The translations under genes and the position numbers were made by a program. A DNA stretch of 64,000 nucleotides from Leucoraja ocellata. Taxonomy: Eukaryota. The notes below the pieces were generated by a model, which worked only from the letters and a program-made list of their open reading frames with translations, was not told the origin of the DNA and did not search any database. The DNA is taken from NCBI GenBank assembly GCA_036785375.1, contig JAWMAR010000622.1, forward strand, positions 744,001 through 808,000, written 5' to 3'. Positions 18,301 to 63,679 of this stretch are shown here, in pieces (position 1 is the stretch's first letter; each line of letters opens with the position of its first letter).

Positions 18301-19387
18301 GATATTCGCCAACATCAATGTGCTTCGAACAAAACAAGCCACTAATATATAAACTGCCCTGTTCAGTTTAGGTCAGATATACAGCGCGGAAACAGGCATT
18401 TCGGCCCAACCGACCAGCGATCCCCGCATATTGACACTATCCTATACATACTAGGGGCAATTTCCACATACAAACCTGTGTGTGGGAGTTAACTGAATAA
18501 CTCGGAGATAACTCACGGGAAAATGTACAAGCTCCATACAGACAGCACCCGTGTTCAGGGATCAAACCCTGGTCTCTGGTGCTGTGAGGCAGCAACTCTA
18601 CCGCTGCACCACCGTGCCTTCCTCAGCACTCAGCGTGATCAAGCAGCATCTGTGAAGGTGAACGGCCACGATTCGGGACTGCGTTGAGGAATTCATGGAG
18701 TGGGGGTGGGTGATAAAGCAGCGGGAAGGAGATTGGTTGAATCAAGCGGGGGAGGGGGCAGGCTTCAGACTGTAGGGACCGGAAGATGGACACACAATGC
18801 TGGAGTAGGAGCGGCGGTATATCTGGAGAGAAGGAAGGGGCGACGTTTCGCATCGAGACAGCCCCCCCCCCCCCCCCCCCCACAAGTCGGCGCCGACCAG
18901 CGTTCACCCCGTACTCCAACACCCCGGACACCTTTACATTTCTTTTTCCAAAATAGGTTCCGTGCGGTTCCCGGAGGTTGCAGGTGGTTGCCGGGGGTTG
19001 CAGGTAGTGGAAGCAGGTAGTGAGACTGACAAAAACCTCCAGGAACCGCACGGAAACCTTGGGTGGAGCGCAAAGTCTCCAGAGGTTTCCGTTCAGCTTT
19101 CCTAAGTGGGACAGGGGCATAAATCTCCAAACGCGGTCGTCTTTGGAATGTTGGAGTGCGGGAAACCGGAGCACCCAGAGAAAACCCACTCAATCACAGG
19201 GAAAACGGGTAAACTCCACACAGACAGCAGCCGAGGTCAGGATCGAACCCGGGTCTCTGCCGCTGTAACACTACCGCTGCACTGGAAAAGGTTAACAGAG
19301 ACATTTGTATGTGTTCCGTCTCTAATTGGAGGTGCGATGTGGGTGGGGAAAGGAGCACGGCCCATTTAAATTCCAATTCACACCCAT

Positions 19388-19420
19388 CCCCGACGTCAAA
19401 ATTATTTATATATTGTATAT
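19388..19420 (+). promoter_or_regulatory. Candidate promoter of the ITIM gene (CRE-like CGACGTCA plus TATA-like TTTATATAT)
   Basis: Motifs ~110-135 nt upstream of ATG 19527 in non-repeat DNA; motif match only. Confidence 0.3.
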
Positions 19421-19526
19421 CTGTCGGCAACTGGACACGAATATCAAGAGAGAGACCCGCCGGATCAACTCATCTTGACGCCGGAGACAGTGAGCCTGAA
19501 TTGGCATTGGGTTTGGACAGCAGAAC

Positions 19527-19554
19527 ATGCTTCCCGTGTGCCTTGTAATACTGA
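19527..19554 (+). CDS. ITIM gene exon 1 (signal peptide start)
   Basis: AACATGC start, MLPVCLVIL, consensus donor A|GTAAGT. Confidence 0.7.
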
Positions 19555-22500
19555 GTAAGTACCATGACGGATGGAGGGGAGGAGTTTTTTTTTTTAATTT
19601 TGGGAGAAGGTGAGATGTAGGTTTACGTTGGGTAGGGGGGGGGGGTGGAGAAGATATTTAATAGGAACCTGAGGGACAACCTTTTAACACAAAGTATGGT
19701 AGGTGTATGGAACGAACTGCCGGGGGAGATAGGTATAATTCCAATGTTTAAAAAACATTTAAATAGATACATGGATAGAAACATATAAACATAGACAATA
19801 GGTGCAGGAGTAGGCCATTCGGCCCTTCGAGCCTGCACCGCCATTCAAAATGATAATGATTGATCATCCAACTCAGTATCCCGTACCTGCCTTCTCTACA
19901 TACCCACTGATCCCTTTAGCCACAAGGGCCACATCCAACTCCCTCTTAAATATAGCCAATGAACTGGCCTCGACTACCTTCTGTGGCAGAGAATTCCACA
20001 GATTCACCACTCTCTGTGTAAAAAATGATTTTCCCATCTCGGTCCTAAAAGATTTCCCCCTTATCCTTAAACTGTGACCTCTTGTTCTGGACTTCCCCAA
20101 CATCGGGAACAATCTTCCTGCATCTAGCCTGTCCAACCCCTTAAGAATTTTGTAAGTTTCTATAAGATCCCCCCTCAATCTTCTAAATTCTAGCGAGTGC
20201 AAGCCGAGTCTATCCAGTCTTTCTTCATGTGAAAGTCCTGACATCCCAGGAATCAGTCTGGTGAACCTTCTCTGTACTCCCTCTATGGCAAGAATGTTTT
20301 TCCTCAGATTAGGAGACCAAAACTGTACGCTATACTCCAGGTGTGGTCTCACCAAGACCCTGTTCAACTGCAGTAGAACCTCCCTGCTCTTATACTCAAA
20401 TCCTTTTGCTATGAATGCTAACATACCATTCGCTTTCTTCACTGCCTGCTGCACCTGCATGCCTACTTTCAATGACGGGTGTACCATGACACCCAGGTCT
20501 CGTTGCATCTCCCCTTTTCCTAATCGGCCACCATTCAGATAATAGGATAGGTTCAGAGGGACATTGGCCAAACGCAAACAGGTGGGACTAATGTAGATGG
20601 GGCAAGTTGGTCGGCGTGGTCAATTAGGGCCTTTTCCACGCTGTGTGATTATATGACTGTGACTTCATGCTGGAATATTTACCGAAAAACAAAGTGCGAG
20701 ATGTTTTGTTCGGTTTAGTTTAGGGGTACAGGAAACAGGCTCTTCGGCCCACTGAGTCCGTACTGACCAGCGATCCCCGCACCATTAACCCAAGCCTGCA
20801 CGCTCAAAGGACAATATGTTTTGTTTACACCAAGTATACAAACTCTAGCCAATTAATCCTCAAACTTGCGCGTCTTTGGAGCGTGCGAAGAAACATAGAA
20901 TTTCGGTGAAAATCCACGCGGTCACTGGTACAACGTAAAACTCCTACAGAGAGCACCAGTAGTGAGGATCAAACCTGGGTCTCTGGCGCTGCGAGGCAAC
21001 AACTCTACCGCTGCGCCACCGTGCTGCCCAGATCGGGCCCCTAGTGCAGACAGTGGCTTAAATTGCATGACTTCCCTGGGCCACGTGTAACACGGTCGAG
21101 AGGCCAACTCTTAAAGGTGCAGGTCATCTCCTACATTGATTACAACGGGTGTCAATGGCTATGGAAAGAAGGCATGAAATTGGATCAGCGGGGAGAGATC
21201 TGCCATGACTAAATGGCGGAGTGGACTCGATGGGCCGAATGGCCTAATTCTACTCCAATAAAGCGTGAACGTGTGACAACCCCACTTAGCCGAAATGCCA
21301 TCGTTCTGTATCACAAGGTAATGGAGAAACCCTCTACTTAACTAAACATAATTTGAAAACAAAATCAAATTGCAGATTCGTCAGCATTTACAGCAGGATT
21401 CCGCGCTGGTGTGATTGACCTGTTGACGTTTCTGCTTAAATAAATTAATTGATTCAAATTATATATATATATTTGTTTCCCCCCCCCCCCTTTTTTTCTT
21501 CTTCTTTTTATACTTTATTTATTTATTTGTTTTTAAGTTTCGCAGCTGCCCCGCTGCATGTATTAGAAACGGTAAATTGCCGTAAAATACGTGCTACCGA
21601 CCGGGGACTATTCCCCACTAGCTTTCACGCGTTTGCAAACTTGTACGGAGAGGTGTCACAACTTCTAATATTTACAACAAAAAAACTAGTGCTAGTTTGA
21701 GGAAGAATCAGCAAGGATGAACGGCCTGTGAGTTTCNNNNNNNNNNNNNNNNNNNNNNNNNNNNNNNNNNNNNNNNNNNNNNNNNNNNNNNNNNNNNNNN
21801 NNNNNNNNNNNNNNNNNNNNNNNNNNNNNNNNNNNNNNNNNNNNNNNNNNNNNNNNNNNNNNNNNNNNNNNNNNNNNNNNNNNNNNNNNNNNNNNNNNNN
21901 NNNNNNNTACGGTGATGCCTTTTTTTCAGGTGCCAAATATATGTTGGCGTGTTACATTCTATGTATAGCTTCATTTTTTTTTAAATATTTATATTTATAA
22001 ATTATATTTTTAAAAGACTTGAAATGCACTTTAATTTCAGTCGGCCGTGTGTCTTGGGAACCACTCCTTTAAAGACTACGAGAGGGAAATTAAACTTCTC
22101 TTAAACTTCAAAAGGATTTGAGTATAGGAGCAGGGAGGTTCTACTGCAGTTGTACAGGGTCTTGGTAAGACCACACCTGGAGTATTGCGTACAGTTTTGG
22201 TCTCCTAATCTGAGGAAAGGCATTCTTGCCCTAGAGGGAGTACAGAGAAGGTTCACCAGACTGATTCCTGGGATGGCAGGACTTTCATATGAAGAAAGAC
22301 TGGATAGACTCGGCTTGTACTTGCTAGAATTTAGAAGATTGAGGGAGAAATTATAGAAACTTACAAAATTCTTAAGGGGTTGGACAGGCTAGATGCATGA
22401 AGATTGTTCCCGATGTTGGGGAAGTCCAGAACAAGGGGTCACAGTTTAAGGATATGGGGAAATCTTTTAGGACCGAGATGAGGAAAATATTTTTCACACA

Positions 22501-25500
22501 TAGAGTGGTGAATCTGTGGAATTCTCTGCCGCAGAAGGTAGTTGAGGCCAGTTCGTTGGCTATATTTAAGAGGGAGTTAGATGTGGCCCTTGTGGCTCAA
22601 GGGATCAGGGGGTATGGAGAGAAGGCAGTTACAGGATACTGAGTTAGATGATCAGCCATGATCATATTGAATGGCGGTGCAGGCTCGAAGGGCCGAATGG
22701 CCTACTCCTGCACCTATTTTCTATGTTCTATGTTTCCCGATTATTGCGCATGTTTGGGAAATTGCTGTTTTATCGGACGTTTAGAAACCACGGTTTTCTT
22801 TACACAGATTCTGCCCGCACATATAACATCGAACACTGAACAATGTAATGTAGGAAGGAACTGTAGATGCTTACACCTTAGAGAGAGAGAGAGAAAAAAA
22901 AATGCTGGAGTAACTCAGCGGGACAGGCAGCGTCTCTGGAGAGAAGGAACGGGTGATGTTTCGGGTCGAGACCCTTCTTGGCTGAGGAAGCAAAAAACAA
23001 ACTGATGGAGAAATGTCCCTCCTCAGATGGTGGCTGACCCGCTGAGTCCCTCTAGTACGTTGTGTTCTTGCTCAAAAATCCGGCATCTGCAGTCATTTGT
23101 GTTTCCATTTTACAGTGGAAACAAAGACAAGGAGGTGCTGGTTAATGCACAAAATGGCCCAAACTGCTGGAGTAACTCAGCGCGGGTCAGGCAGAATCCT
23201 TGGAGAACGTGAATAGGTGATGGTTCGGGTCGAGGCCCCTCTTGAGACCCGACCCGAAACGTCACCTATCCATTTTCTCCCGGGAACATGCCTGACCCCT
23301 GAGTTACTCCAGCACTTTGTGTCCTTCGACGATAGACACATTAATGCTGGAGTAACTCAGCGGGACGGGCAGCATTTCCTGAGAGAAGGGCGAATGGATG
23401 ATGTGTCGGGGGTCGAGACCCTTCTTCAGATCCGAAACGTCGTCCATTCCTTCTCTCCAGAGATGCTGCTGTCCCGCTGAATTGCTCCAGCCTTCTGCGT
23501 CTGCTGAACAATAAAGCATAGGAGCAGCCCTTCGGCCCATACTTTCCATGCCGTACATGATGCCAAGATAAATTAATACCCTCTACATGTTGATGGTCCA
23601 TGCCCAAAGAGCGGTGAAAATATGGAACTGCCTCCTGCGGAAAGGAGCTGAGAATAAGTTACTTTAGTTTAGTTTAGTTTAGTTTAGTTTAGTTTAGTTT
23701 AGTTTAGTTTAGTTTAGTTTAGTTTGGAGATACAGCGCGACCGAGTCCTTACCGACCGGCGACTGGGCGAACCCACACATTGCCACTATCCAACAAACAC
23801 TAAGGACAATTTTACAATTTTACCGAAGCCAATTAAACCTGAGGTACGAAGCCTTTAAACCTGAGGTACACAAAAATGCTGGCGAAACTCAGCGGGTGCA
23901 GCAGCATCTATGGAGCGAAGGAAATAGGCAACGTTTCGGCCCGAAACGTTGTCTATTTCCTTCGCTCCATAGATGCTGCTGCACCCGCTGAGTGTCTCTA
24001 GCATTTTTGTCTACCTTCGATTTTCCAGCATCTGCAGTTCCTTCTTAAACCTTTAAACCTGTACGTTTTGGGTATTCAAAGATGCCTGCACGTTTTTTTT
24101 GGAATGTGGGAGGAAAGCGGAGAACCCGGAGAAAACCCATACAGGTCACGGGGAGAATGTACAAACTCCGTACAGACAGTACCCCGTAGTCAGAATCTAA
24201 CCCGGGTCTCTGGTGCTGTGAGGCAGAAACTGTGCCGTTAATATTCGCTGGTGGTTACTGGATACTGGAAAATAGGGATTAAGCCCTTAACATTTTACTG
24301 TGTTGGTGAGATAATATTAATCTATTTGTAGTCGCTTGAGCTGAACATGGCGTTGAATTTCCCCTCGTATTTTCACCTGACTTTTGTTTAGCATTTGGTG
24401 TCCGGGTGATATCGGCGCCGACGGATGAAATGGTGACAGCTAGCGGAGCGAGAACGGCGACGGAGACCACAGTTATGAATGAGCCCATAACCGATACATC
24501 GTGGAACAGTCTGACCAAATCCACAGGTAGAAACTAGTGGGAGAGTCTAGGACAAGAGGTCATAGTCTCAGAATTAAAGGACGTTCTTGCCATAGAGGGA
24601 GTATAGAGAAGTTTCACCAGACTAATTCCTGGGATGGCAGGACTTTCATATGAAGAAAGACTGGATAGACTCGGCTTGCACACGCTAGAATTCAGAAGAT
24701 TGAGGGGGGATTTTATAGAAACTTACAAAATTCTTAAGGGGTTGGACAGGCTAGATGCAGGAAGATTATTCCCGATGTTGGGGAAGTCCAGAACTATGGG
24801 TCACAGTTTAAGGATAAGAGGGAAGTCTTTTAGGACCGAGATGAGAAAAACATTTTTTACACAGTGAGTGGGAATCTGTGGAATTCTCTGCCACAGAAGG
24901 TAGTTGAGGCCAGTTCATTGGCTATATTTAAGAGGGAGTTAGATGTGGCCCTTGTGGCTAAAGGGATCAGGGGGTATGGAGAGAAGGCATGGATGAGATA
25001 CTGAGTTGGATGATCAGCCATAATCATATCGAATGGCGGTGCAGGCTCGAATGGCCTACTCCTGCACCTATTTTCTATGTTTCCTTTAAGAAGGAGAAAG
25101 AGTTCTATAGCATTGGGTAATACAATGTGGAAACAGGCCCTTCGGCTCAACTTACCAACATCGGCCAACATGCCCCAGCTATACTAGTCCTACCTGCCTG
25201 CGCTTGCTCCATATCCCTCCAAACATGTCCTATCCATGTACCTGTCTAACAGTTTCTGAAACATTAGGATGGTCCCAGCCTCAACTTCCTCCTCTGGCAG
25301 CTTGTTCCATACACCCACCACCCTTTGCGTGAAAATGTTACCCCTCAGATTCCTATTAAATATTTTCCCCTTCACCTTGAACCTATGTCCTCTGTCCTCG
25401 ATTCCCCTACTCTGGGCAAGAGACTCTGTACATCTACCCGATCTATTCCTCTCATGATTTTATACACATCAATAAGATCACCCCTCATCTTCCAGCTCTC

Positions 25501-28500
25501 CAGGGAATGCAGACCCAGATGGGGAGGTATTTCTTTCATCGGGGGGTGGTCAATCTGTGGAATTATTTGCCACAGAAGGCTGTGGAGGCCAAGTCAATTG
25601 ATATTGTTTAAGGCAGAGATTCTCGACTAGTACGGGTGTCTCGATTTATATGGAGATCGCAGGAGAATTATGTTAGGAGGGAGAGATAGATCAGGCATGA
25701 TGGAGTGACGTGGTACACTTGATGGGCCGAATGACCTTATTCTGTTCCTATCACATGACATTATGATCTTGTGAACAGGGATTAAAATCCTGTCCTAACC
25801 CATCCGGACCCGACTGGATCCCATTTTTTAAAACGCAACCTGCGTTCGTAACCCTTGCATTCCCTCTCTCTCCGTCCCTCCCCCACCCTGCCTCTCTTGC
25901 TAATTTCACCTCCTTCGTCATCACGTCGTCCCCAGCCAACAATGGACCATTGTGGGCTCCACCTTTCCCGAGTGATCTATGCCGGCACTGCTTTGTTCTG
26001 TACCTTCCCATACCTCAATATCCTTCTCCCCCGATTCTGAATCTGATGAAGGGTCTCGACCCGAAAGCTCACCAATACCTTTTTCTTCCAGAGATGCTGC
26101 CTGACCCGCTGAGTTACCCATGCATTTTGTGTCTATCCTCTGCGTCCACTCTTGCGGGTTGTCTCATTATGTCTCGGCTTGTACTCGCTAGAATTTAGAA
26201 GATTGAGGGGGGATCTTATAGAAACTTACAAAAGTCTTAAGGGGTTGGACAGGCTAGATGCAGGAAGATTGTTACCGATGTTGGGGAAGTCCAGGACAAG
26301 GGATCACAGCTTAAGGATAAGGGGGATATCCTTTAAGACCGAGATGAGAAAAAACATTTTCACACAGAGAGTGGTGAATCCCTGGAACTCTCTGCCACAG
26401 AAGGTAGTTGAGGCCAGTTCATTGGCTATATTTAAGATGGAGTTAGATGTGGCCCTTGTGGCTAAAGGGATCAGGGGGCACGGAGAGAAGGCAGGTACAG
26501 GATACTGAGTTGGATGGTCATCCATGATCATATTGAATGGCGGTGCAGGCTCGAAGGGCCGAATGGCCTCTACTCCTGCACCTATTTTCTATGTATCAAT
26601 GTATCTATGATCTGAAGAGGGGTCCCGACCCGAACTGCCCCTTTAGACTTCATACATTAGAATTTAGATACAGTGCGGGAACAGGCTCTTCGACCCACAG
26701 AATCCCCACCTACCAGCGATCACCCCGTACACTATCACTATCCTACACACAGGGACAAATTTACAGAAACGAATTACCCGACAAATCCAGCACGTCTTTG
26801 TGCTGTGGGAGGAAAACCGGAAAACCCGGAGAAAACCCGCGCGGTCACAGAGAGAACGTACAAACTCCACACAGGCCGAATCCGCAGTCTCCACCCAGGA
26901 ACCAGATTCTCTGGCGCTGTAAAATGCCCCTGTCCCACTTAGGAAACCTGAGCGGAATCCTCTGGAGACTTTACGCCCCACCCAAGGTTTCCGTGCGGTT
27001 CCCGGAGGTTGCAGGTGGTTGCCGGAGGTTGCGGGTAGTGGAAGCGGGTAGGGAGACTGACAAAAACCTCCGGGAACCGCACGAAACCCTTGGGTGGGGC
27101 ACAAAGTCTCCAGAGGTTTCCGTTCAGGTTTCCTAAGTGGGACAGGGGCATGAGGGAGCAACTCTACGCTGCACCTCAACTATCCATGTTCTCCAGCGAT
27201 GCTGCCTGACCAGTTGAGGTACTCCAGCATTTTGTGTTCTCGTTATCATCTTCTCCTTTCGGGAAACTCCCGCGCCCCATAGATTGGGGGCGCGTAGAGC
27301 GACTAATTGATTTCATCCACCACGGGCCAGCAGCGGCCATGTGGGCCAAATGGCCGCATGCACGGCTGCAGTAAATTTGGGGAGGAAACAACAGATGTCT
27401 CACATTCAGGCCGATGCCGTGTGACACTGGGCTTGGCGTTGTATGGGGGAGGTGCGGGCGCCGGCAGGTCGCCCACTCTCACAGGCATTTCACCTCTGAC
27501 CAAGTCACCAACTTGCATTAAGCTAAGCCCGTGGGCTGCCTGTGGGTAGATGACCTATCTTTGAATATTTAGTTGTGAGTCTTGTTGCTAAGTGTGCAGG
27601 TCTCATGCAGGTGTGCAGGTCTCATGCTCTCGCTGCGGTTTCATGAGGAAAAGCGTAGCCTTCAACCACCGTCCTCGCTACTAAATCGTGCCCATCGCTC
27701 TACATTCGACCAGACCTGATCGAAGTATGCAACATTATGATAGGCATAGAGGGGGTGGACAGTCAGAACCATTTTTCCAGGGTGAAAATGTCAAAGACTC
27801 GAGGGCCCAGCTTTTCATTCAGAGGAGCAAAGTTCAAATGAGATTGTCAAAGAGTTATAGTCACCCAGTGGGGAACAGGCCCTTCGGCCCAACTTGCCCA
27901 TACCGGCCAATATGTGTTCGGCCCATACCCCTTTAAACCTAACCTATGGTATTGGCGGTAGGGTGTTGACATGGATTGAAAATTGGTTGGCTGACCGGAA
28001 GCAAAGAGTAGGAGTGAACGGGTCCTTTTCACAATGGCAGGCAGTGGCGAGTGGAGTGCCGCAAGGCTCGGTGTTGGGGCCGCGACTGTTTACCATATAT
28101 ATTAATGATTTGGAAGAGGAAATTAGGAGCAACACTAGCAAGTTTGCGGATGGCACAAAGGTGGTGGCAGTGTGAACTGTGAAGAGGATGTTAGGAGGTT
28201 GCAGGGTGACCTGGACAGGTTGAGTGAGTGGGCAGATGCGTGGCAGATGCTGTATAATATAGATAAATGTGAGGTTATCCACTTTGGCGGCAAAAACAAG
28301 GGGGCAGATTATTATCTCCATGGGGTTAGGTTAGGTAAGGGGGAGGTGGGCGTCCTTGTACACCGGTCACTGAAAGTTATCGTGCAGGTACAGCAGGCAG
28401 TGAAGAAAGCTAATGGAAATGTTGGCCTTAATAACAAGAGGATTTCAGTATAGGAGTAAAGAGGTTCTTCTGCAGTTGTACAGGGCTCTGGTGAGACCAC

Positions 28501-31500
28501 ATCGGGAGCATTGTGTACAGTTTTGGTCTCCTAATTTGAGCAAGGACATCCTTGTGATTGAGGCAGTGCAGCGTAGGTTCACGAGATTGATCCCTGGGAT
28601 GGCGGGACTGTCATACAGGGAAAGATTGAAAAGACTCGGCTTGTATTCGCTGGAGTTTAGTAGGATGTGGGGGAGGGGAGGGGGTGAGGATCTTATAGAA
28701 ACATATAAAATTATAAAAGGACTGGACAAGCTAGATGCAGGAAAAATGTTCCCAATGTTGGGCGAGTCCAGAACCAGGGGCCACAGTCTTAGAATAAAGG
28801 GGAGGCCATTTAAGACTGAGGTGAGAAAAAAACCTTTTCACCCAGAGAGTTGTGAATTTATGGAATTCCCTGTCACAGAGGCCAGTGGAGGCCAAGTCAC
28901 TGGATGGATTTAAGAAAGAGTTAGATAGAGCTCTAGGGGCTAGTGGAGTCAAGGGATATAGGGAGAAGGCAGGCACGGGTTATTGATAGGGGATGATCAG
29001 CCATGATCACAGTGAATGGGGCTGCTGGCTCGAAGGGCCAAATGGCCTCCTCCTGCACCTATTTTCTTTGTTTCTATCTTTCTATCATGTACCTGTCTAA
29101 ATGTTTCTTAAACGTTGGCGATTGTCCCAGCCTCAACTACCTCCTCCGGCAGCTTGTTCCATACACCCACCACCTTTTGTGTGAAAAAGCTACCCCTCCG
29201 ATTCCCATTGCATCCTTTCCCGTGGTAGAGTCTACACTAGTTCTGGCTCTGTGAGGCAGCAACTCTACCGATACAGTACTGTGACAATTTTACAGTAGCC
29301 CCCTCCCCCAGACCCTCACAATACTCTGGGCATGTTTGATCCATATGAACCCTGGCCAACGGTCAACAGACCAAATGTAGAGGTTTACCGGCGACCCGTG
29401 GTGTAACAACTCTTTCTGACAGACGGTGACAGCGGAGCGACTTGCCCCTTGCTCTCTGGAAGTGACATTTTGATCGCCGCCGCGCTTGGACTTGTGTTCG
29501 GGATCGCCGCGTTGTCCTGCCTGTACCTGGTTAAACATCGGATCGGTGAGTGACTGAGCTCCTTCCAGGGGTGTTCCTTAGATATCGGGCAAGGGGCCGG
29601 TCAAAGGATTACTCGAGGATTGGTAACTGCCCGGGTTTTTCAGATGCCAGCGCACCGTGCGAGTTGAGTTCTCTCAAGAATATTTCCCGGAACATCGGAG
29701 TTTGAAGGGAGACTTGATAGAAGTCACAGAGTTATAGAATCATGGAGTGATACATTGTGGAAACAGGCCGTTCAGCCCAACTTGTCCATACTGACCAACA
29801 TTCCCCATCTACACCCGTCCTACCTGCTCGCGTTTGATCCACATCCCTCCAAACCTGTCCAAATCCATGTACCTGTCTAACTGTTTCTTAAACGTTGATA
29901 TAACCCCTGCCTCAACTACCACCCCTGGCAGTTTTTTTCATAAACCCACCACCCTTTGTGTGAAAACGTTACCTGTCAGGTTTCTATTAAATCCTTTCCC
30001 CTTCTCCTTCAACCTATGTCCCTCTGGTCCACGATTCACCTACTCTTGTTAAGAGACTCTGTGCATCAACCCGATATGTTCCTCTCATGATTTTATACAC
30101 CTCAACAATACCATCACACTTCATCCTTCTGAGCTCCAAGGAATAGAGTCCCAACCCTGAGTTCTAGCCCTGGCAACATCCTTGTAAATCTTCTCTGCAC
30201 CTTTTCTAGTTTGACAGTATATTTTGTATAACATGGTGGCCAGAACTGAACGCGATACTCTAAATGTGGCTTCACCAACGTCTTATACAAATCCCCACCA
30301 CGGGCGCTGTCTGTACGGAGTTTGTACGCTCTCCTCGTGACCGCGTGGGGTTTCTCCGAGATCTTCGGTTTCCTCCGACACTCCGAAAACGCACAGGCTT
30401 GTAGGTTAACTGGCTTGGTATAAATGCAAATTGCCCTGCGTGTGCGGGGGTCGCTGGTCGGTGCAGACTTGGGGGGCCTGTTTTCGCGCTGCATCGCCAA
30501 AGGAAGGATAGCAAAGTTGAACATTTAGACAGGTACATGGATAGGATTGGTTTAGAGGTGCACGAAATATTGGAGTAACTCAGTGAGCAACTCAGCAGGA
30601 CAGGCAGCATCTCTGGATAGAAGGAATGGGTGACGTTTCGGGTCGAGACCCTTCTTCAGACTGAGGATATGGGCAAAAACGCACGCAGTGGGTCCAGTGC
30701 AGATGGGGCATGTTGATCAGTGTGGGCAAGTTGGGCCGAAGGGCCTGTTTCCATGACTCGTGTCCCATATAATATTCTGAATTATCGGGATTTTATCTGT
30801 TTTAATGTAATCTACCACCCTGCCTCGCAAATCTGCTCCCTGCTAAATTACAATACGAAATCATCAATTTCATTCTAATTTCCAATATATGATCTAAAGC
30901 GAATGGGACGTCTAATTGTTATTTAATTACCACTGATTAGAATCTTCTCTGATTACATGCAGACTTGCTTCACCAATGTTCATTTCATTTGAACATCGAA
31001 TCATTAATTTCATTCTAACTTCCTTTAACAGAAAACGGCTGATTTCAATCTAATCTATTTCACTATAATCTGAAATTATTGATCATAATGTGTTCGCAAT
31101 TGAAAGCGTGAATCGTTGTTCTGCGCATTACAATATAAACCAGATGATTTCGATGTAGATTTAGTTTAGAGATACAGCGCGAAAACAGGCCCTTCGGCCC
31201 ACTGAGTCATAGAAATATAGAAACATAGAAAATAGGTGCAGGAGTAGGCCATTGGGCCCTTCGAGCCTGCACCGCCGTTCAATATGATCATGGCTGATCA
31301 TCCAACTCAGTATCCCGTACCTGCCTTCTCTCCATACCCCCTGATCCCTTTAGCCACAAGGGCCACATCTAACTCCCTCTTAAATATAGCCAATGAACTG
31401 TGGCCTCAACTACCTTCTGTGGCAGAGAATTCCACAGATTCACCACTCTCTGTGTAAAACATGATTTTCTCATCTCGGTCCTAAAAGACTTCCCCCTTAT

Positions 31501-34500
31501 CCTTAAACTGTGACCCCTTGTTCTGGACTTCCCCAACATCGGGAATAATCTTCCTCCATCTAGCCTGTCCAACCCCTTAAGAATTTTGTAAGTTTCTATA
31601 AGATCCCCCCTCAATCTTCTGAATTCTAGCGTGTACAAGCCGAATCTATCCAGTCTTTCTTCATATGAAAGCCCTGCCATCCCAGGAGTCCACGCCGACC
31701 AGCGATCCCCGCACTATCCTACATACACTAGGTGTAAGTTATAGTGACACCAAGCCAATAAACCTTTAGTTTATTTGTAGTTGTGGAGGAAACTGGAGCA
31801 CCCGGAGAAAACCCACGCAGCTCACGGGGAGAACCTACGAACTCCATACAAAACAGCACCCATAGTCAGGATCGAACCCGGGTTTCTGGCGCTGTGAGCA
31901 GCAAATCTACCGCTGAGCAACCGTGCCGCCCTGATATATGAATGTCGAGCGTGGTTAATTGTAAAGAGTTCGCTTGTGTTTCAGTTCCATTCCAATCCCA
32001 CACAAGAGATTAATGTGCAATATTAGACCACATGGTATTGGAGCTAAGGCATTGACATGGATAGAGGGCTGGTTGGTAGATAGGATGCAAAGAGTAGGAA
32101 TTAACGGGTCCCTTTTCAGAATGGCAGGCAATGATTAGTAGGGTGCAGCAAGGCTCAGTGCTGGGACCCCAGTTATTTACAAATTATAACCGATTTAGTC
32201 GAAGGACTTAAATATAACATCTCCAAGATGACACAAAGCTGGGTGGCAGGGTGAGCTGCGAGAAAGATGCTTTGAGGCTGCAGTGTGACTTGGATAGGTT
32301 TGGTGAGTGGGCAGAAGATTGGCAGATGCAGGATAATGTAGATAAAAGTGAGGTTATCCACTTTGGTGGCAAGAACAAGAAGGCAGGTTATTATCTGAAT
32401 GGTGTCAGATTGGGGAAAAAGGGAGGTGCAACGAGACTTGTACATCAGTCATTGAAAGTAAGCATGCAGGTACAGCAGGCAGTGAAGAAAGCAAATGCCA
32501 CGTTGGCCTACATAGCGAGATGATTGAAGCATAGGAGCAAGGAGATCCCTCTGCAGTTGCACATGGTCCTAGTGAGACCGCAACAGAGTTTGTGTGCAGT
32601 TTTGGTCTCCTAATTTGAGGAAACACATTCTTGCTGTTGAAGGAGTAGGTTCACCAGATTAATTCCCGGGATGGCGGGAATGACATATGATGAAATAATG
32701 GATCGACTGGGCTAGCATTCACTGGAATTTAGAAGGATGAGAGGATATCTTATAGAAACATGTAACATTCTTAAAGGGTTGGACAGGCGAGATGCAGGAA
32801 AAAATGTTCCCGATGTTGGGGTAGTCCAGAACCAGGGGTCACAGTTTAAGAATAAGGGGTAGACCATTTAGGATCGAGATGAAGATAAACCCAGACAGTT
32901 GGGAATCTGTGGAATTCTCTGCCACATAAGGCAGTGGAGACCAATTCACTGGATGTTTTCAGTGGAGTTAGATATCGCTCTTGAAGCTAATGGAATCAAT
33001 GGATATGGGGAGAAAGCAGGACCGGGGTACTGATTTTGGATGGTCAGCCATGATCATATTGAATGGTCGCTGGCTTAAAGAGCCGAATGGCATAATTCTG
33101 CACCTATTATCTATGTTTCTATTTCCATGTTCAGCCGCCTGTACGGATTCGAGCTGCTTTGATGGGTCCCCTGATTTTGTTCGTCGATCGAACAGCCAGG
33201 TACTTGTCATTTTCACTTCGTTCTTTGATCTCGTTCAGTTTACCCAGCTAGAGTTTTAAGAGATACTGCATGGCCCTTCCACTCACCGAGACCACACCGA
33301 CCAGCGATCACCCATTCACGCTAGTTCTAACTTACACAGTAGGGGCAATCTCAGTTCCGTTCAGTTTAGTTTATTGTCACGTGTACCGAGGCGCAGTGAA
33401 AAGTTTTCTGCTGCGTGCTATCCAGTCAGCAGAAAAACAATACATGATTACAATTAATCCACGGATAGATACGATAGAAACATGGAAATTAGGTGCAGAA
33501 GTAGGGCATTCGGCCCTTCAAGCCAGCTCCGCCATTCAATATGATCATCCAAAATCAGTACCCCATTCCTGCTTTTTTCCCATATCCCTTGATTCCGTTA
33601 GCCCGAAGAGCTAAATCTAATTCTAGCTTGAAAACATCCAGTGAATTTGCCTCCACTGCCCTTTCCGTGGCAGAGAATTCCACACGTGCACAATTCTCTG
33701 GGTGAAAAGATGTTTCCCTCATCTCAGTGCGAAATGACCTACACCCTATTCTTAAACTGGGGGGGGCTGATTCTCGCGGTGTGTCTTTTCACACTTCTCG
33801 ACCTTTTGCCTGATGGAAGAGGGGATAAGAGGGAATGGCTAGGGTTATGCTGCTGAAATCTCTGCAATAACCAACCTGACCTCCCGGTGGCTCAGTACTT
33901 CAACTCCCCCTCCCATTCTGTATCCGACCTCTCTGTCCTGGGCCTCCTCCACGGCCAGAGCGAGCACCACCGGAAATTGGAGGAACAGCACCTCATATTC
34001 CGCTTGGGGTGTCTCCATCCTGAGGGCATGAACATTGAATTCTCCCAATTTTGTTAGCCCTTGCTGTCTCCTCCCCTTCATCAACCCTCAGACTGTCTCC
34101 TCCCACCCCTCAGCCCTCGGGCTCCTCCTCCTCCCTTTTCCTTTCTTCTCCCCGTGATGGTGTTGAGATGTAAATACTGTGCGAAGTTTAAATGAAACCG
34201 TGAAAAAATATTGAGGGTAGAAATATTGTGCTGCATTGTCCTGTTTATCCCAACGTCGACGTTGATAATTCTGCTGCTCGGAGTGCGGTGTGATATATAT
34301 GTAGTGTTGTAAGAATAGTATGTAATGTTAATTCAGGGCTGTTGCGGTGCTGAAATATCCGTCTCTATTCTATTTCTTTCCAGCTGCCCCGGGGACAACA
34401 TATCATCTACTCGAGCCTCAATGTGAAACCAGCGCGGACACAGAGAGAGACTTCGGGAGACGGGGAGGATTCACACGAGGATTCACCGGGAGACTCGGTG

Positions 34501-37130
34501 TCGACGCGCGGGCAGTTCGCGGAAGAGCAGGAGAAGGTACCAATAGTAAACATTTTAACAATTGGCGACCGCAATCCAAGAGTCAAGGGGGTTTTATTGT
34601 CGTATGTTCCAGATAGAATAATACAATTCTTACTTGTAGCAGCACAACAGAATGTGTAAACATGGCACACTGTAAACAATGGAATAAACGAGAAAAAATT
34701 ATTTCAGTGTGTGTATATACATACACAAACTCNNNNNNNNNNNNNNNNNNNNNNNNNNNNNNNNNNNNNNNNNNNNNNNNNNNNNNNNNNNNNNNNNNNN
34801 NNNNNNNNNNNNNNNNNNNNNNNNNNNNNNNNNNNNNNNNNNNNNNNNNNNNNNNNNNNNNNNNNNNNNNNNNNNNNNNNNNNNNNNNNNNNNNNNNNNN
34901 NNNNNNNNNNNNNNNNNNNNNNNNNNNNNNNNNNAACAATAATGGTGGATTAACAACAATATGTAGTTCAGAGATTGAGGGATGTTCTAGTGTATCCTAC
35001 CTAGTACAAGTTTAAATGAGTTTATTGTCATGTGGCCGTGGTAACGATAGCCCGGGAGTGAGTGAAAGAGACTTGTTAACTGATGGGCCTCTTCTAATTC
35101 AGGGCAACTTTTCTAATGCAAAGTGCTGGAGAAACACATCGCTCCTGTAACTCAGTGGGTCAGGCAGCACCTCTGGTGGATGTGGGTGGGCCACGTTCGA
35201 GTCGGCGCACTTGTTCAGATTAATTTATCTGTTTCCTTCAGAAAGAACGGGTGTGGGCGGGGGCGGGGGCGGGGGCGGGGGGGGGGGGGGGGTAGTAGGA
35301 GGATGGGGCATAGGGGGAGGGGAGTGGCGTGGGTGAAGAGCTGGGAGTGAGAGAAGACCGGGACAGAGCAAGACCGGCCATAGATGGCCTCAGGCAGAGT
35401 GGTGCCCTGCTGGGCCCTATTGTTGACATGGGGAAGAGTGATCTGAAGAGTGGGACAACGTGGAGAGCTGAGCAAATGGTTAAAAGACGGGGGGGGGGGG
35501 GGGGGGGGGGGGAGGACAGGGAGAATGGGAGGGGTGATGGAGGGAGGAAGGGAGAGAGGGGGAGGGAATTGGGCATTGGGAGGACGGGGAATAACACATT
35601 GTCCCTGGCGTGAATGTGGAGAATGATGTATGGCGCTATTACAGCGGTTCAATGTGTCCAATGTTGACGCGATACTGGTGCTGCATTTCAATGGCATCAC
35701 GGGGCATCACGGGGCAATGAAACAGGTCCTTAAGCCCATAGAGTCACAGAGTCAGTCAAGGAATCTGACCAACTCGTCCACGCCAATCCACAGGCCCCAT
35801 CTGAGCTGTTGCAACATACCCACGTTTGCCCCATACTCAACGAAACATTTATTTTCCACGCATCTGCCCCAATGCCTATTCAATATTGTTATTGCACCTG
35901 CCTCAACCTCGCCCTCTGGCGGCTCATTTTATTCACGTCTGGGTCAACAATCAAGGGGCCAAATGCTGAAGTAACTCAGCGAGTCAGGCAGCATCTCTGG
36001 AGTGAAGGAATGGGTGATGTTTAGGGTCATAGAAACATAGAAAATAGGTGCAGGAGTAGGCCATTCGGCCCTTCGAGCCTGCACCGCCATTCGATATGAC
36101 CATGGCTGATCATCCAACTCAGTATCCCATCCCTGCCTTCTCTCCATACCCCTTGATCCCTTTAGCCACAAGGGCCACATCTAACTTCCTCTTAAATATA
36201 GCCAATGAATGTGGCCTCAACTACCTTCTGTGGCAGAGAATTCCACAGATTCACCACTCTCTCTGTAAAACATGATTTTCTCATCTCGGTCCTAAAAGAC
36301 TTCCCTCTTATCCTTAAACGGTGACCCGTTGTTCTGGACTTCCCCAACATCGGGAATAATCTTCCTGCATCTAGCCTGTCCAACCCCGTATGAATTTTGT
36401 ACGTTTCTATAAAATCCCCCCTCAATCTTCTGAATTCCAGCGAGTACAAACCGAGTCCATCCAGTCTTTCTTCATATGAAAGTCCTGACATCCCAGGAAT
36501 CAGTCTGGTGAACCTTCTCTGTACTCCCTCTATGGCAAGAATGTCTTTCCTCAGATTAGGAGACCAGGGTCCTAATTAGGGTCGAGGCCCTTCTTCAGAA
36601 TTCTCTTCCTATCTAGGGACTAATCAATACTCGGGATTCCAAGGTGCCACGTGACATTACTGCGAGCGTGAATAGTTCAGTTTAGTTTAGTGATACAGCG
36701 CGGAAACAGGCCCTCCGGCCCACCGAGGCCGCGCCTACTAGCGATCCCCGTACACTCGCTCTATCCTACACACACTAGGGAACATTTAAAATATGTACCA
36801 AAGCGAATACACCTACACACTTGTACGTCTTTTTGAAGTGTGGGCGGTAACCGGAGCACCCGGACAAATGCCAATGCAGGTCACGGGGTGAAACGGACAA
36901 ACTCCGCACAGGCAGCAATTGTTATCCGGATTGAGCCCGGGTCTCCGGCGCTGTGAGAGAGCAACTCCAGCGGGAGCGGAGAATCAGTTGACAACGGAGC
37001 TGTATTTCACCGTCTCAATTGTGTTTGCTTGTAGGTGCTCGGTGGGCAAGAAATCGCTTATGCGTATCTGAATCTGAAGCCGAAACGGAGACAAAGTGAG
37101 TCCCCTGAGGCAGACGGGGAGATTCATTGA
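19527..37130 (+). CDS. Uncharacterised type I membrane protein with a mucin-like short ectodomain and two ITIMs (199 aa); exons 19527-19554, 24392-24526, 29423-29545, 33135-33199, 34384-34536, 37035-37130
   Basis: Six GT-AG-bounded exons with compatible phases (1,1,1,0,0) sum to 600 nt: [199 protein letters not shown]. Confidence 0.8.
19780..20540 (-). mobile_element. CR1 LINE 3' fragment with an uninterrupted ORF2 C-terminus
   Basis: 234-aa ORF: [39 protein letters not shown]. Confidence 0.92.
22110..22735 (+). mobile_element. CR1 LINE 3' fragment
   Basis: [15 protein letters not shown]... with a frameshift; TTTCTATG tail. Confidence 0.9.
23664..23724. repeat. (TTTAG)n microsatellite, expanded SINE tail
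   Basis: ~12 perfect units adjoining a minus-strand V-SINE. Confidence 0.9.
23864..24049. mobile_element. Penelope-derived foldback element inserted in a SINE
   Basis: ~150 bp near-perfect hairpin centred on ACGTTTCGGCCCGAAACGT; 12-bp direct repeat CCTTTAAACCTG at 23852-23863 and 24050-24061. Confidence 0.65.
24392..24526 (+). CDS. ITIM gene exon 2 (end of signal peptide, Ser/Thr-rich stalk)
   Basis: CTGACTTTTGTTTAG| acceptor, 135 nt open, CAG|GTAGA donor. Confidence 0.75.
24585..25083 (+). mobile_element. CR1 LINE 3' fragment
   Basis: [24 protein letters not shown]...; tail present. Confidence 0.9.
26175..26605 (+). mobile_element. CR1 LINE 3' fragment
   Basis: ORF 26152-26508 is a CR1 C-terminus. 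Confidence 0.9.
26925..27150. mobile_element. Full-length Harbinger-like MITE nested in a V-SINE
   Basis: TIRs TGCCCCTGTCCCACTTAGGAAACC / GGTTTCCTAAGTGGGACAGGGGCA, arms ~85 bp. Confidence 0.8.
27940..29075 (+). mobile_element. CR1 LINE fragment including the RT core
   Basis: [27 protein letters not shown]; frameshifted. Confidence 0.92.
29423..29545 (+). CDS. ITIM gene exon 3 (transmembrane)
   Basis: TCTTTCTGACAG| acceptor, 22-aa hydrophobic helix followed by KHR, donor G|GTGAGT. Confidence 0.82.
31209..31685 (-). mobile_element. CR1 3' fragment inserted in a V-SINE (31160-31932)
   Basis: GAGTC duplicated at 31204-31208 and 31686-31690. Confidence 0.88.
32030..33123 (+). mobile_element. 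Older, degenerate CR1 LINE fragment
   Basis: RT-region similarity with stops and frameshifts; tail ends just before ITIM gene exon 4. Confidence 0.85.
33135..33199 (+). CDS. ITIM gene exon 4 (juxtamembrane)
   Basis: 65 nt; its phase 1 to 0 switch is exactly what is needed to join exons 3 and 5; CAG|GTACTT. Confidence 0.68.
33866..34150 (+). mobile_element. Penelope-like element GIY-YIG C-terminal relic (similar relic ~46155-46385)
   Basis: [55 protein letters not shown]. Confidence 0.75.
34384..34536 (+). CDS. ITIM gene exon 5 (ITIM IIYSSL)
   Basis: TTTCTTTCCAG| acceptor, 153 nt open, AAG|GTAC donor. Confidence 0.8.
36028..36566 (-). mobile_element. CR1 3' fragment (mirror copy ~61400-61938 +)
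   Basis: CR1 ORF2 C-terminus; TTAGGGTC direct repeats flank it. Confidence 0.88.
37035..37130 (+). CDS. ITIM gene exon 6 (ITIM IAYAYL, stop)
   Basis: GTTTGCTTGTAG| acceptor, 31 aa then TGA at 37128-37130. Confidence 0.8.
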   Translation: MLGGQEIAYAYLNLKPKRRQSESPEADGEIH

Positions 37131-60839: not shown

Positions 60840-63679
60840 TCAATTAATCTCCCCGTCTGCCTCAGGGGACTCACTTTGTCTCCGTTTCGGCTTCAGATTC
60901 AGATACGCATAGGCGATTTCTTGCCCACCGAGCACCTACAAGCAAGCACAATTGAGACGGTGAAATACAGCTCCGTTGTCAACTGATTCTCCCGCTCCCG
61001 CTGGAGTTGCTCCCTCACAGCGCCGGAGACCCGGGCTCAATCCGGATAACAATTGCTGCCTGTGCGGAGTTTGTCCGTTTCACCCCGTGACCTGCATTGG
61101 CTTTCTCCGGGTGCTCCGGTTTCCGCCCACACTCCAAAAGACGTACAAGTCTGTAGGTGTATTCGCTTTGGTACACATTTTAAATTTCCCCTAGTGTGTG
61201 TATGATAGAGCGAGTGTACGGGATCGCTAGTAGGCGCGGCCTCGGTGGGCCGAAGGGCCTGTTTCCGCGCTGTATCACTAAACTAAACTGAACTATTCAC
61301 GCTCGCAGTAATGTCACATGGCACCTTGGAATCCCGAGTATTGATTAGTCCCTAGATAGGAAGAGAATTCTGAAGAAGGGCCTCGATCCTAATTAGGACC
61401 CTGGTCTCCTAATCTGAGGAAAGATATTCCTGCCATAGAGGGAGTACAGAGAAGGTTCACCAGACTGATTCCTGTGATGTCAGGCCATTCATATGAAGAA
61501 AGACTGGATAGACTCGGCTTGTACACGCTGGAATTCAGAAGATTGAGGGGGTTCTTATAGAAACTTACAAAATTATTCAGGGGTTGGACAGGCTAGATGC
61601 AGGAAGATTATTCCCGATGTTGGGGAAGTCCAGAACAACGGGTCATCGTTTAAGGATAAGAGGGAAGTCTTTTAGGACCGAGATGAGAAAATCATGTTTT
61701 ACACAGAGAGTGGGTGAATCTGTGGAATTCTCTGCCACAGAAGGTAGTTGAGGCCAGTCCATTGGCTATATTTAAGAAGGAGTTAGATGTGGCCCTTGCG
61801 GCTAAAGGATCAGGGGGTATGGAGAGAAGGCAGGGATGGGATACTGAGTTGGATGATCAGCCATGATCATATCGAATGGCGGTGCAGGCTCGAAGGGCCG
61901 AATGGCCTACTCCTGCACCTATTTTCTATGTTTCTATGACCCTAAACGTCACCCATTCCTTCACTCCAGAGATGCTGCCTGACTCGCTGAGTTACTCCAG
62001 CATTTGGCCCCTTGATTTGTTGACCCAGACGTGAATAAAATGAGCCGCAGAGGGCGAGGTTGAGGCAGGTGCAATAACAATGTTGAATAGGCATTGGGGC
62101 AGATGCGTGGAAAATAAATGTTTCGTTGAGTATGGGGCAAACGTGGGTATGTTGGAACAGCTCAGATGGGACCTGTGGATTGGCGTGGACGAGTTGGTCA
62201 GATTCCTTGACTGACTCTGTGACTCTATGGGCTTAAGGACCTGTTTCATTGCCCCGTGATGCCATTGAAATGCAGCACCAGTATCGCGTCAACATTGGAA
62301 ACATTGAACCGTTGTAATAGCGCCATACATCATTCTCCACATTCACGCCAGGGACAATGTGTTATTCCCCGTCCTCCCAATGCCCAATTCCCTCCCCTCT
62401 CTTCCCTTCCTCCCTCCATCACCCTCCCATTCTCCCTGTCCTCTCCCCCCCCCCCCCCCGTCTTTTAACCATTTGCTCAGCTCTCCACGTTGTCCCACTC
62501 TTCAGATCACTCTTCCCCATGTCAACAATAGGGCCCAGCAGGGCACGACTCTGCCTGATGCCATCTATTGCCGGTCTTGCTCTGTCCCAGTCTTCTCTCG
62601 CTCCCAGCTCTTCACCCACGCCACTCCCCTCCCCCTATGCCCCATCCTCCCACTACCCCCCCCCCCCTCCCGCCCCGCCCCACACCCGTTCTTTCTGAAG
62701 GAAACAGAAAAATAAATCTGAACAAGTGCGCCGACCGGAACGTGGCCCACCCACATCCACCAGAGATGCTGCCTGACCCACTGAGTTACAGGAGCGATGT
62801 GTTTCTCCAGCACTTTGCATTAGAAAAGTTGCCCTGAATTAGAAGAGGCCCATCAGTTAACAAGTCTCTTTCACTCACTCCCGGGCTATCGTTACCACGG
62901 CCACATGACAATAAACTGACTTGAACTTGTACTAGGTAGGATACACTAGAACATCCAAGCTCTTGAACTACATATTGTTGTTATTCCACCATTATCGCTN
63001 NNNNNNNNNNNNNNNNNNNNNNNNNNNNNNNNNNNNNNNNNNNNNNNNNNNNNNNNNNNNNNNNNNNNNNNNNNNNNNNNNNNNNNNNNNNNNNNNNNNN
63101 NNNNNNNNNNNNNNNNNNNNNNNNNNNNNNNNNNNNNNNNNNNNNNNNNNNNNNNNNNNNNNNNNNNNNNNNNNNNNNNNNNNNNNNNNNNNNNNNNNNN
63201 NNNNNNNNNNNNNNNNNNNNNNNNNNNNNNNNNNNNNNNNNNNNNNNNNNNNNNNNNNNNNNNNNNNNNNNNNNNNNNNNNNNNNNNNNNNNNNNNNNNN
63301 NNNNNNNNNNNNNNNNNNNNNNNNNNNNTGAGTTTGTGTATGTATATACACACACTGAAATAACTTTTTCTCGTTTATTCCATTGTTTACAGTGTGCCAT
63401 GTTTACACATTCTGTTGTGCTGCTACAAGTAAGAATTGTATTATCTATCTGGAACACACGACAATAAAACCCCTTGACTCTTGGATTGCGGTCGCCAATT
63501 GTTAAAATGTTTGCTATTGGTACCTTCACAGCCTCTCTTTCCGAGAACTGCCCCGCGCGTCGACACCGAGTCTCCCGGTGAATCCTCGTGTGAATCCTCC
63601 CGTCTCCCGAAGTCTCTCTCTGTGTCCGCGCTGGTTTCACATTGAGGCTCGAGTAGATGATATGTTGTCCCCGGGGCAG
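60840..63679 (-). CDS. 3' exons of a second copy of the ITIM gene (63524-63679 and 60840-60935); 5' exons would lie beyond the window
   Basis: [52 protein letters not shown] (156 nt) and [31 protein letters not shown]; splice sites conserved. Confidence 0.7.

What the first reader, a model, noticed from the sequence alone, without database searches (positions are those of the whole stretch)
19527..37130. Hidden 6-exon gene for an Ig-less, mucin-stalk, double-ITIM membrane protein
Seen: six short exons buried in ~17 kb of repeats splice with canonical GT-AG sites and matching phases into a 199-aa ORF. It has a signal peptide (predicted cut VIS/AP), a ~51-aa ectodomain that is ~35% Ser/Thr with one membrane-proximal Cys, and a 22-aa TM with AxxxGxxxG. 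Three Cys lie in or near the TM's cytoplasmic end, followed by two I-x-Y-x-x-L motifs (IIYSSL Y126, IAYAYL Y177). Established: paired ITIMs recruit SHP-1/SHP-2; GxxxG drives TM dimerisation (glycophorin A); short-ectodomain ITIM adaptors such as SIT1 and LST1 exist in mammals. Inference: an inhibitory receptor or adaptor with no folded ligand-binding domain that I cannot assign to a known family, so a candidate undescribed cartilaginous-fish immune regulator.
Basis: partly seen in the sequence, partly recalled or inferred. Interest (0 to 1): 0.88.

Follow-up and report, generated by a model that had tools for sequence, protein, structure and literature searches.

The report
Unconfirmed small ITIM membrane-protein gene, skate
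The six-exon model is really in the sequence and its two tyrosine-motif exons look like true coding exons, but no RNA read and no related protein supports it, so it remains a plausible unannotated inhibitory adaptor-like gene, not a demonstrated one.

Summary
Six exons (28, 135, 123, 65, 153 and 96 nt) have AG/GT sites and compatible phases and sum to 199 codons plus a stop. The leader, the 52-aa Ser/Thr-rich stalk with one Cys, the 22-aa TM and both I-x-Y-x-x-L motifs are as described.

Evidence for real exons:
- Exons 5 and 6 are old duplicates kept at protein level (0 of 20000 shuffles reach their score; synonymous differences).
- The ten splice sites score better than random AG/GT sites.
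- A twin copy lies in an inverted duplication. The scan also noted this twin on adjoining DNA (s1-884854).

Evidence against:
- Four RNA runs gave zero depth on most of exon 2 and near zero in exon 1's bin.
- No RNA run holds exon 6 with its 3' flank.
- phmmer with exon 5 found nothing real among 1.84 billion representatives. Annotated proteins of three skate species are in the related collection.

No Ig exon is visible. The neighbouring SLAM-like genes are separate genes. In layout the model resembles LST1 and SIT but is not related to them by any test run. The joined protein was never searched. Interest is moderate to low until expression is shown.

The parts
19527..19554 (+). Exon 1: ATG plus 9 hydrophobic codons and 1 base, donor GTAAGT. 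Proposed first part of the leader. This is the least supported exon.
   Evidence: Leader-like exons of this kind are rare: 4 in 128 kb over both strands, and this one scores best. RNA depth is 0.03-0.4 in its bin.
24392..24526 (+). Exon 2, phase 1 in and out: end of the leader plus 37 aa of the Ser/Thr-rich stalk.
   Evidence: It is unique in the window. RNA depth is 0 in bin 24308-24493 in all 4 runs. No Pfam match.
29423..29545 (+). Exon 3, phase 1 in and out: 14 aa of stalk with the single ectodomain Cys, a 22-aa TM, then K-H-R-I.
   Evidence: (Kyte-Doolittle 2.6 over 19 aa). It is unique in the window.
33135..33199 (+). Exon 4, phase 1 in and phase 0 out: juxtamembrane piece with two Cys.
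   Evidence: The acceptor lies 12 nt after the end of a repeat copy.
34384..34536 (+). Exon 5, phase 0 in and out: first I-x-Y-x-x-L motif (Tyr 126) and an acidic/Ser-rich stretch.
   Evidence: Its acceptor is the best of the ten sites (top 0.2% of AG sites). phmmer gave no real hit.
37035..37130 (+). Exon 6: second I-x-Y-x-x-L motif (Tyr 177), an overlapping Y-x-N, and the stop codon. It is a paralogue of exon 5.
37530..37535 (+). ATTAAA, a possible poly(A) signal 400 nt after the stop codon.
   Evidence: pattern only.
21737..21907 (.). N run inside intron 1. Not read and not filled.
34733..34934 (.). N run inside intron 5. The twin has an N run at the matching place (63000-63328).
63533..63679 (-). 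Twin copy of exon 5. Its first 27 codons are identical. It has a -1 and a +1 indel 48 nt apart and a 3-nt insertion. Both splice sites are kept.
60840..60935 (-). Twin copy of exon 6: two substitutions (one synonymous, one His to Asn). Acceptor and stop are kept.
34052..41757 (.). Left arm of an inverted duplication. Its partner is 64000-56100 at 93-96% identity and runs off the window end.

Best explanation
A lineage-specific, unannotated gene of a skate, present as a convergent pair in an inverted duplication. It would encode a 199-aa type I membrane protein with no folded ectodomain.

Inferred mechanism, none of it shown: the leader is cleaved and the 52-aa Ser/Thr-rich stalk is O-glycosylated. 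The single stalk Cys and the small-residue TM motif promote dimers. The Cys near the cytoplasmic face are palmitoylated. Src-family kinases phosphorylate Tyr 126 and Tyr 177, and these recruit SH2 phosphatases (SHP-1/SHP-2). The overlapping Y-x-N at Tyr 179 could bind Grb2. The protein would then act as an inhibitory transmembrane adaptor, working like LST1 or SIT.

What is shown: the exon structure, the motifs, the exon 5/6 duplication kept at protein level, and the twin copy.
For: - The six-exon ORF is intact with GT..AG introns and compatible phases.
- E5 and E6 align without a gap from their first codon over the first 20 codons. The local alignment score is 62, and 0 of 20000 shuffles reach it (maximum 47).
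- In those 20 codons, 10 residues are conserved and 6 of them use different synonymous codons. No DNA-level alignment of the two exon starts appears. That pattern fits an old exon duplication under protein-level constraint.
- Crude scores of the 5 donors and 5 acceptors, set against all 3451 GT and 3941 AG in the window, give a Fisher p of 1.4e-5.
- E1-type leader exons are rare: 4 in 128 kb.
- The twin copy keeps the splice sites, the first motif and the stop. Its -1 and +1 indels in E5 restore the frame.
- Phase 1 introns around the leader, stalk and TM exons, followed by phase 0 tail exons, are the usual layout of immune-receptor genes (established knowledge).
- The gene sits among immune genes: SLAM-like V-set and Ig exons, and a PRY-SPRY exon.
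Against: - RNA depth was 0 in bin 24308-24493, which covers the first 102 of E2's 135 nt, and 0.03-0.4 in E1's bin. This held in 4 of 4 RNA runs from 3 studies, with 1.1-1.9 Gb read from each. Every laid read was on repeats. The tissues are unknown, and that the runs are the window's species rests on the tool's label.
- Among the 24 runs listed for E6 plus 290 nt of 3' flank, none on record as RNA holds it.
- phmmer with E5 against 1.84 billion representatives returned one hit, a 1937-aa repetitive protein with no aligned stretch, which is spurious. Yet the related 90%-cluster collection returned NCBI proteins of Leucoraja erinacea, Amblyraja radiata and Rhinoraja longicauda and a Logan-derived ORF of the neighbouring SLAM-like gene.
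- ITIM-type motifs and TM-like open intervals are common enough that a free choice of exons can build such a chain.
- Exon and flank identity between the two arms does not differ clearly, so the twin shows no purifying selection.
Confidence: 0.45

Rival explanations
1. A silent relic. The exons once belonged to a working gene, which explains the E5/E6 protein-level conservation. The present locus and its twin would no longer be expressed, and would be too young as pseudogenes to have acquired stops.
For: No RNA on E1 or E2 in 4 of 4 runs. No RNA holder of E6 plus its flank. No protein containing an E5-like stretch in a collection that does hold three annotated skate proteomes and a transcript-derived ORF of the neighbouring gene. 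The twin's E5 carries two frameshifting indels and a changed 3' end. The arms show no excess conservation of exons.
Against: The left copy has no stop or frameshift in 600 nt and keeps ten good splice sites. The twin's two indels restore the frame. The four RNA runs are of unknown tissue, and only 5-32% of each run was read.
Confidence: 0.3
2. The TM and tail exons (E3-E6) are real, but the 5' end is wrong. The true transcript would carry other leader or Ig exons, either hidden in the N run of intron 1 or lying further upstream, making this an ordinary ITIM-bearing Ig receptor.
For: E1 and E2 have no support beyond their own form. Phase 1 boundaries would accept any Ig exon. The true length of the N run at 21737-21907 is unknown.
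Against: No Ig-type ORF or Ig signature lies on the + strand between 19.0 and 37.6 kb. The only Ig exons in the window are on the other strand. They belong to SLAM-like genes that have their own leader and TM exons, and the SLAM-like proteins show no similarity to E1-E6. A nominal 171-nt run is too short for an Ig exon. The scan's reader described the twin as Ig-less too (s1-884854, not checked here).
Confidence: 0.12
3. A chance assembly of open intervals by a reader who was free to choose among thousands of AG..GT pairs.
For: There are 6790 AG..GT open intervals of 45-250 nt on the + strand of the span. ITIM-type motifs occur at 32 loci and TM-like stretches at 3. There is no expression and no homologue.
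Against: The E5/E6 similarity is not chance (0 of 20000 shuffles). The splice sites give a Fisher p of 1.4e-5. All exons lie in DNA that is unique within the window. Chance could at most explain E1 and E2.
Confidence: 0.08

Closest known systems
LST1 (LST1/A), eutherian transmembrane adaptor
   Same: [quoted passage not shown] The model has one stalk Cys, Cys at and after the cytoplasmic end of the TM, and two ITIM-type motifs.
   Different: LST1 is 97 aa with a very short extracellular segment, whereas the model is 199 aa with a 52-aa stalk and a cleavable leader. No exon gave any Pfam match at E up to 1, so none matched an LST1 family model either. LST1 is reported only in eutherians, in MHC class III (passages of PMC1654159). 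The window holds SLAM-like and PRY-SPRY exons instead. The likeness is one of layout, not ancestry.
SIT (SIT1), SHP2-interacting transmembrane adaptor
   Same: Per passages of PMC2193021, SIT is 196 aa, with a leader, a short glycosylated ectodomain with one Cys that forms the disulfide dimer, a 20-aa TM, and a tail with tyrosine motifs including an ITIM and Grb2-type sites. The model has almost the same size and the same order of parts, and it also has a Y-x-N.
   Different: SIT has an 18-aa ectodomain with one N-glycan next to the Cys. The model has no sequon and a Ser/Thr-rich stalk. SIT has one ITIM among five motifs. No sequence similarity was found with E5.
ITIM-bearing Ig-superfamily inhibitory receptors
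   Same: A tail with paired ITIM-type motifs encoded by duplicated phase 0 exons, and phase 1 leader, stalk and TM exons. That this layout is typical of the class is recalled knowledge.
   Different: No Ig exon is visible on the gene's strand. No similarity to the neighbouring SLAM-like proteins.

Membership tests
LST1 | Sequence match to the LST1 family profile | tested here: not met
   Pfam scan of E2, E3, E5 and E6 separately at E up to 1 gave 0 families. The exons were scanned apart, and the joined protein was not scanned.
LST1 | [quoted passage not shown] | tested here: inconclusive
   One Cys lies 8 residues before the TM, but the ectodomain is 52 aa. Dimerisation cannot be tested here.
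LST1 | Two ITIMs in the tail | tested here: met
   There are two I-x-Y-x-x-L motifs, in E5 and E6. This is a motif-level match only.
LST1 | Location in the MHC class III inflammatory region; eutherian distribution | tested here: not met
   The recognisable genes in the window are SLAM-like and PRY-SPRY. PMC1654159 reports LST1 as a eutherian gain. Only 64 kb was seen.
SIT1 | 18-aa ectodomain with an N-glycosylation site adjoining the dimerising Cys | tested here: not met
   There is no N-x-S/T sequon in the 52-aa ectodomain.
SIT1 | Sequence similarity of the tail | tested here: not met
   phmmer with E5 against 1.84 billion representatives gave no real hit. Only E5 was searched.
Ig-superfamily ITIM receptor | At least one extracellular Ig domain | tested here: not met
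   No Ig-type ORF among the 51 + strand ORFs of 65 aa or more between 19.0 and 37.6 kb, and no Ig signature on the + strand. The N run 21737-21907 cannot be tested.
SLAM/CD2 family | V-set plus C2 ectodomain and similarity to SLAM-like proteins | tested here: not met
   The V-set and C2 exons are on the minus strand with their own leader and TM exons. blastp of E1-E6 against six skate SLAM-like proteins gave only hydrophobic matches at E of 0.006 or higher.
ITIM signalling (functional class) | Tyrosine phosphorylation and SHP-1/SHP-2 binding | not testable with these tools
   This needs expression, pervanadate treatment and co-precipitation.

The most novel reading that the evidence does not exclude
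Skates evolved, independently of eutherian LST1 and of SIT, an Ig-less, mucin-stalked ITIM adaptor. It is kept as a palindromic gene pair head-to-head with SLAM-like receptor genes. The annotated relative of those neighbouring genes has only a 17-residue tail after the TM and no tyrosine motif (P0004). The adaptor could then be the inhibitory signalling partner of such tail-less receptors, an ITIM counterpart of the DAP12-type chains.
Probability: 0.07. Interest if true: 0.7.

Novelty: new variant of a known kind. Interest (0 to 1): 0.36.

Why it matters
If expressed, this would be an inhibitory transmembrane adaptor without a ligand-binding domain in a cartilaginous fish, unrelated in sequence to the mammalian ones by any test run here. 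That would show that this layout arose more than once. It would also offer a candidate signalling partner for the short-tailed SLAM-like receptors next to it. If it is silent, it is one more intact-looking gene relic in a duplicating immune-gene cluster.

Tried and rejected
**Inversion idea.** I considered that the Ig-less gene and the TM-less SLAM-like duplicate might be two halves of one gene split by an inversion or a misjoin. I rejected this. SLAM-like copy 1 has its own TM exon at 3803-3681. Copy 2 lacks it because 3272-4051 has no partner in the tandem duplicate. The SLAM-like proteins do not resemble E1-E6.

**Searches that gave nothing.**
- Pfam on four exons gave nothing.
- The ESM Atlas search with E5 gave no usable hit.
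- phmmer with E5 gave one spurious repetitive protein.

**Orthologous loci.** I tried to fetch the loci around two skate SLAM-like proteins to look for E1-E6 there.

**Exon-sized queries.** The search for homologous proteins was not used with exon-sized queries. Its length window (up to 1.75 times the query) cannot reach a 199-aa protein from any single exon or exon-bearing ORF, the longest of which is 101 aa.

**Literature.** Three searches listed no paper on an Ig-less ITIM adaptor in cartilaginous fish. This covers only the held library. Supplements were not consulted.

Full report
**Observation**

I read 19300-37500 and checked the model exon by exon.

| Exon | Coordinates | Length (nt) |
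|---|---|---|
| E1 | 19527-19554 | 28 |
| E2 | 24392-24526 | 135 |
| E3 | 29423-29545 | 123 |
| E4 | 33135-33199 | 65 |
| E5 | 34384-34536 | 153 |
| E6 | 37035-37130 | 96 |

Every intron starts with GT and ends with AG. The phases fit (1, 1, 1, 0, 0) and the sum is 600 nt, that is 199 codons and a stop. The split codons read ACA, GAC and GCC.

After the proposed cut the ectodomain is 52 aa, with 18 Ser+Thr, one Cys and no N-glycosylation sequon. The TM is 22 aa with a small-residue motif. E5 and E6 each carry an I-x-Y-x-x-L motif, and the tyrosines fall at 126 and 177 by the exon lengths. E6 also has a Y-x-N two residues later.

The signal-peptide call therefore stays a reading by eye.

**The N runs**

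Both N runs (21737-21907 and 34733-34934) lie within introns, so no reading frame runs through them. Whether the DNA on their two sides is contiguous cannot be shown.

In both duplications of the window the N runs lie at matching places in the two copies. For the second run, the order E5, N run, E6 recurs in the twin. I did not fill any run or look one up.

**Is it more than chance?**

The chain alone is not. On the + strand of the span there are 6790 open AG..GT intervals of 45-250 nt. ITIM-type motifs occur at 32 loci and TM-like stretches at 3. Three things go beyond chance.

1. E5 and E6 are homologous.
   - tblastn within the window gave E-values of 2e-4 and 7e-5.
   - The local score is 62 and 0 of 20000 shuffles reach it (maximum 47).
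   - The alignment starts at the first codon of both exons and has no gap for 20 codons, so the acceptor is at the same place in both.
   - Of the 10 residues conserved in those 20 codons, 6 use different synonymous codons. blastn finds no significant DNA alignment of the two exon starts.
   - This is what an old exon duplication under protein-level constraint looks like.
2. Crude scores of the ten splice sites, set against all AG and GT in the window, give a Fisher p of 1.4e-5.
3. Leader-like exons (ATG, hydrophobic run, GTRAG donor in phase 1) number 4 in 128 kb, and E1 is the best of them.

**Surroundings**

- **Inverted duplication.** Region 34052-41757 matches 64000-56100 at 93-96% identity.
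  - It carries a twin of E5 (63679-63533) and of E6 (60935-60843) on the minus strand.
  - The twin's E5 has a -1 and a +1 indel 48 nt apart, a 3-nt insertion and changes near its 3' end. Both splice sites are kept.
  - The twin's E6 has one synonymous change and one His-to-Asn change.
  - Exons are not clearly better conserved than flanks.
  - A first-stage note of the scan (s1-884854) describes the rest of the twin, beyond the window end, as Ig-less too. I could not check that.
- **Spacer.** It holds a lone PRY-SPRY exon at 43956-44582 on the minus strand.
- **SLAM-like genes.** To the left, a tandem duplication (1525-10597 and 10967-18859) holds two SLAM-like genes on the minus strand.
  - Copy 1 has its leader at 6654-6559, V at 5538-5209, C2 at 4708-4415 and TM at 3803-3681.
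  - Copy 2 has leader, V and C2 but no TM exon, because 3272-4051 has no partner in copy 2. This agrees with note s1-885077.
  - The best protein matches are 'signaling lymphocytic activation molecule-like' proteins of Leucoraja erinacea (92% identity), Amblyraja radiata and Rhinoraja longicauda. The window therefore comes from a skate.
  - These proteins show no similarity to E1-E6. That removes the idea that the Ig-less gene is the other half of the TM-less duplicate.
- **No Ig exon on the gene's strand.** None of the 51 + strand ORFs of 65 aa or more between 19.0 and 37.6 kb looks like an Ig domain. The Ig signature search found nothing on that strand.

**Expression**

- The look-up of sequencing runs with E6 plus 290 nt of 3' flank found no holder on record as RNA among the 24 runs listed. 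It offered raw-read RNA runs carrying the species label.
- Four runs from three studies were read to 1.1-1.9 Gb each. Depth was 0 in bin 24308-24493 (the first 102 of E2's 135 nt) and 0.03-0.4 in E1's bin. All laid reads sat on repeats.
- None of the 15 joints listed joins E1 to E2. A further 803 joints were not shown, but with zero depth on that part of E2 no read can cross the junction.
- The tissues are unknown and only 5-32% of each run was read. This is real but limited evidence against expression.

**Relatives**

- Pfam found nothing in E2, E3, E5 or E6.
- phmmer with E5 against 1.84 billion representatives gave one hit, a 1937-aa repetitive protein with no aligned stretch.
- The related collection demonstrably holds annotated proteins of three skate species and a transcript-derived ORF of the neighbouring gene. 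Neither an annotated protein nor an assembled ORF with an E5-like stretch therefore seems to exist there.
- The Atlas gave nothing.

**What it is most likely, and how it would work**

The E5/E6 pattern, the intact frame and the good splice sites make real coding exons the best reading. The lack of RNA and of any annotated relative keeps a working gene at about 0.45. A silent but still intact relic stands at about 0.3, a wrong 5' end at about 0.12, and chance at about 0.08.

If it is made, the protein would be a type I membrane protein with an O-glycosylated stalk, probably dimeric through its stalk Cys and TM motif, and palmitoylated. Its two ITIM-type tyrosines would be phosphorylated and would recruit SH2 phosphatases. 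All of these steps are inferred.

**Comparison with known proteins**

I saw the following papers as passages only.

- **LST1.** It has a very short ectodomain with a dimerising Cys, a TM, a palmitoylation site, and two ITIMs that bind SHP1 and SHP2 (PMC8111073). It is reported as a eutherian gain in MHC class III (PMC1654159).
- **SIT.** It is 196 aa with a leader, an 18-aa ectodomain with one N-glycan beside the dimerising Cys, and five tyrosine motifs including one ITIM (PMC2193021).

The model works like these on paper but fails their sequence, glycan and location tests. It is an analogue, not a member.

The three literature searches listed no description of such a gene in cartilaginous fish. 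This covers the held library only.

**Verdict**

- The novelty, if the gene is real, is a new variant of a known kind.
- Interest is 0.36 until a spliced transcript or a conserved orthologue is shown.

Noticed in passing
window 34052-41757 and 56100-64000: A large inverted duplication at 93-96% identity, with a spacer of about 14 kb. It runs off the window end, so the ITIM gene exists as a convergent pair.
   Followed up: partly
window 1525-10597 and 10967-18859: A tandem duplication at 92-95% identity carrying two SLAM-like genes on the minus strand. The second copy lacks the TM exon because a 780-nt stretch (3272-4051) has no partner. A Rhinoraja longicauda protein (P0008) ends by reading on past the C2 exon in the same way.
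   Followed up: yes
window 3681-3803 (-) and protein P0004: The SLAM-like receptor has only a 17-residue tail after its TM and no tyrosine switch motif, in the annotated Leucoraja erinacea relative.
   Followed up: partly
window 43956-44582 (-): A lone open PRY-SPRY (B30.2) exon in the spacer of the inverted duplication (SPRY E 1.4e-24, PRY E 1.7e-18). No RING, B-box or Ig exons were recognised nearby. It lies 16 kb downstream of the twin's last exon, on the same strand.
   Followed up: no
window N runs 5954-6093/14628-14830, 7362-7529/16071-16217, 8032-8287/16244-16535, 34733-34934/63000-63328, 38019-38314/59214-59345: The N runs sit at matching places in both copies of each duplication, with different lengths. 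Several are flanked by microsatellite-like sequence. They look like the same hard-to-read element in each copy rather than random scaffold gaps. They were not filled.
   Followed up: no
window 19778-20408 and 22109-22736 (intron 1): Two copies of the same retroelement fragment in opposite orientation (93.7% identity). RNA reads show many 'opposite strands' joints between them (20280/22116 and 20283/22113) and depths in the hundreds to thousands, so the element family is heavily transcribed somewhere in the genome.
   Followed up: no
window 37059-37076 (E6): The second ITIM-type tyrosine is followed two residues later by a tyrosine in a Y-x-N context, the usual Grb2 SH2 preference (recalled).
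   Followed up: no
window 54325-54660 (+) and 54932-55165 (-): Two related ORFs with a Cys-rich motif that looks like a THAP-type zinc finger, probably from a DNA transposon. This was judged by eye only and not scanned.
   Followed up: no
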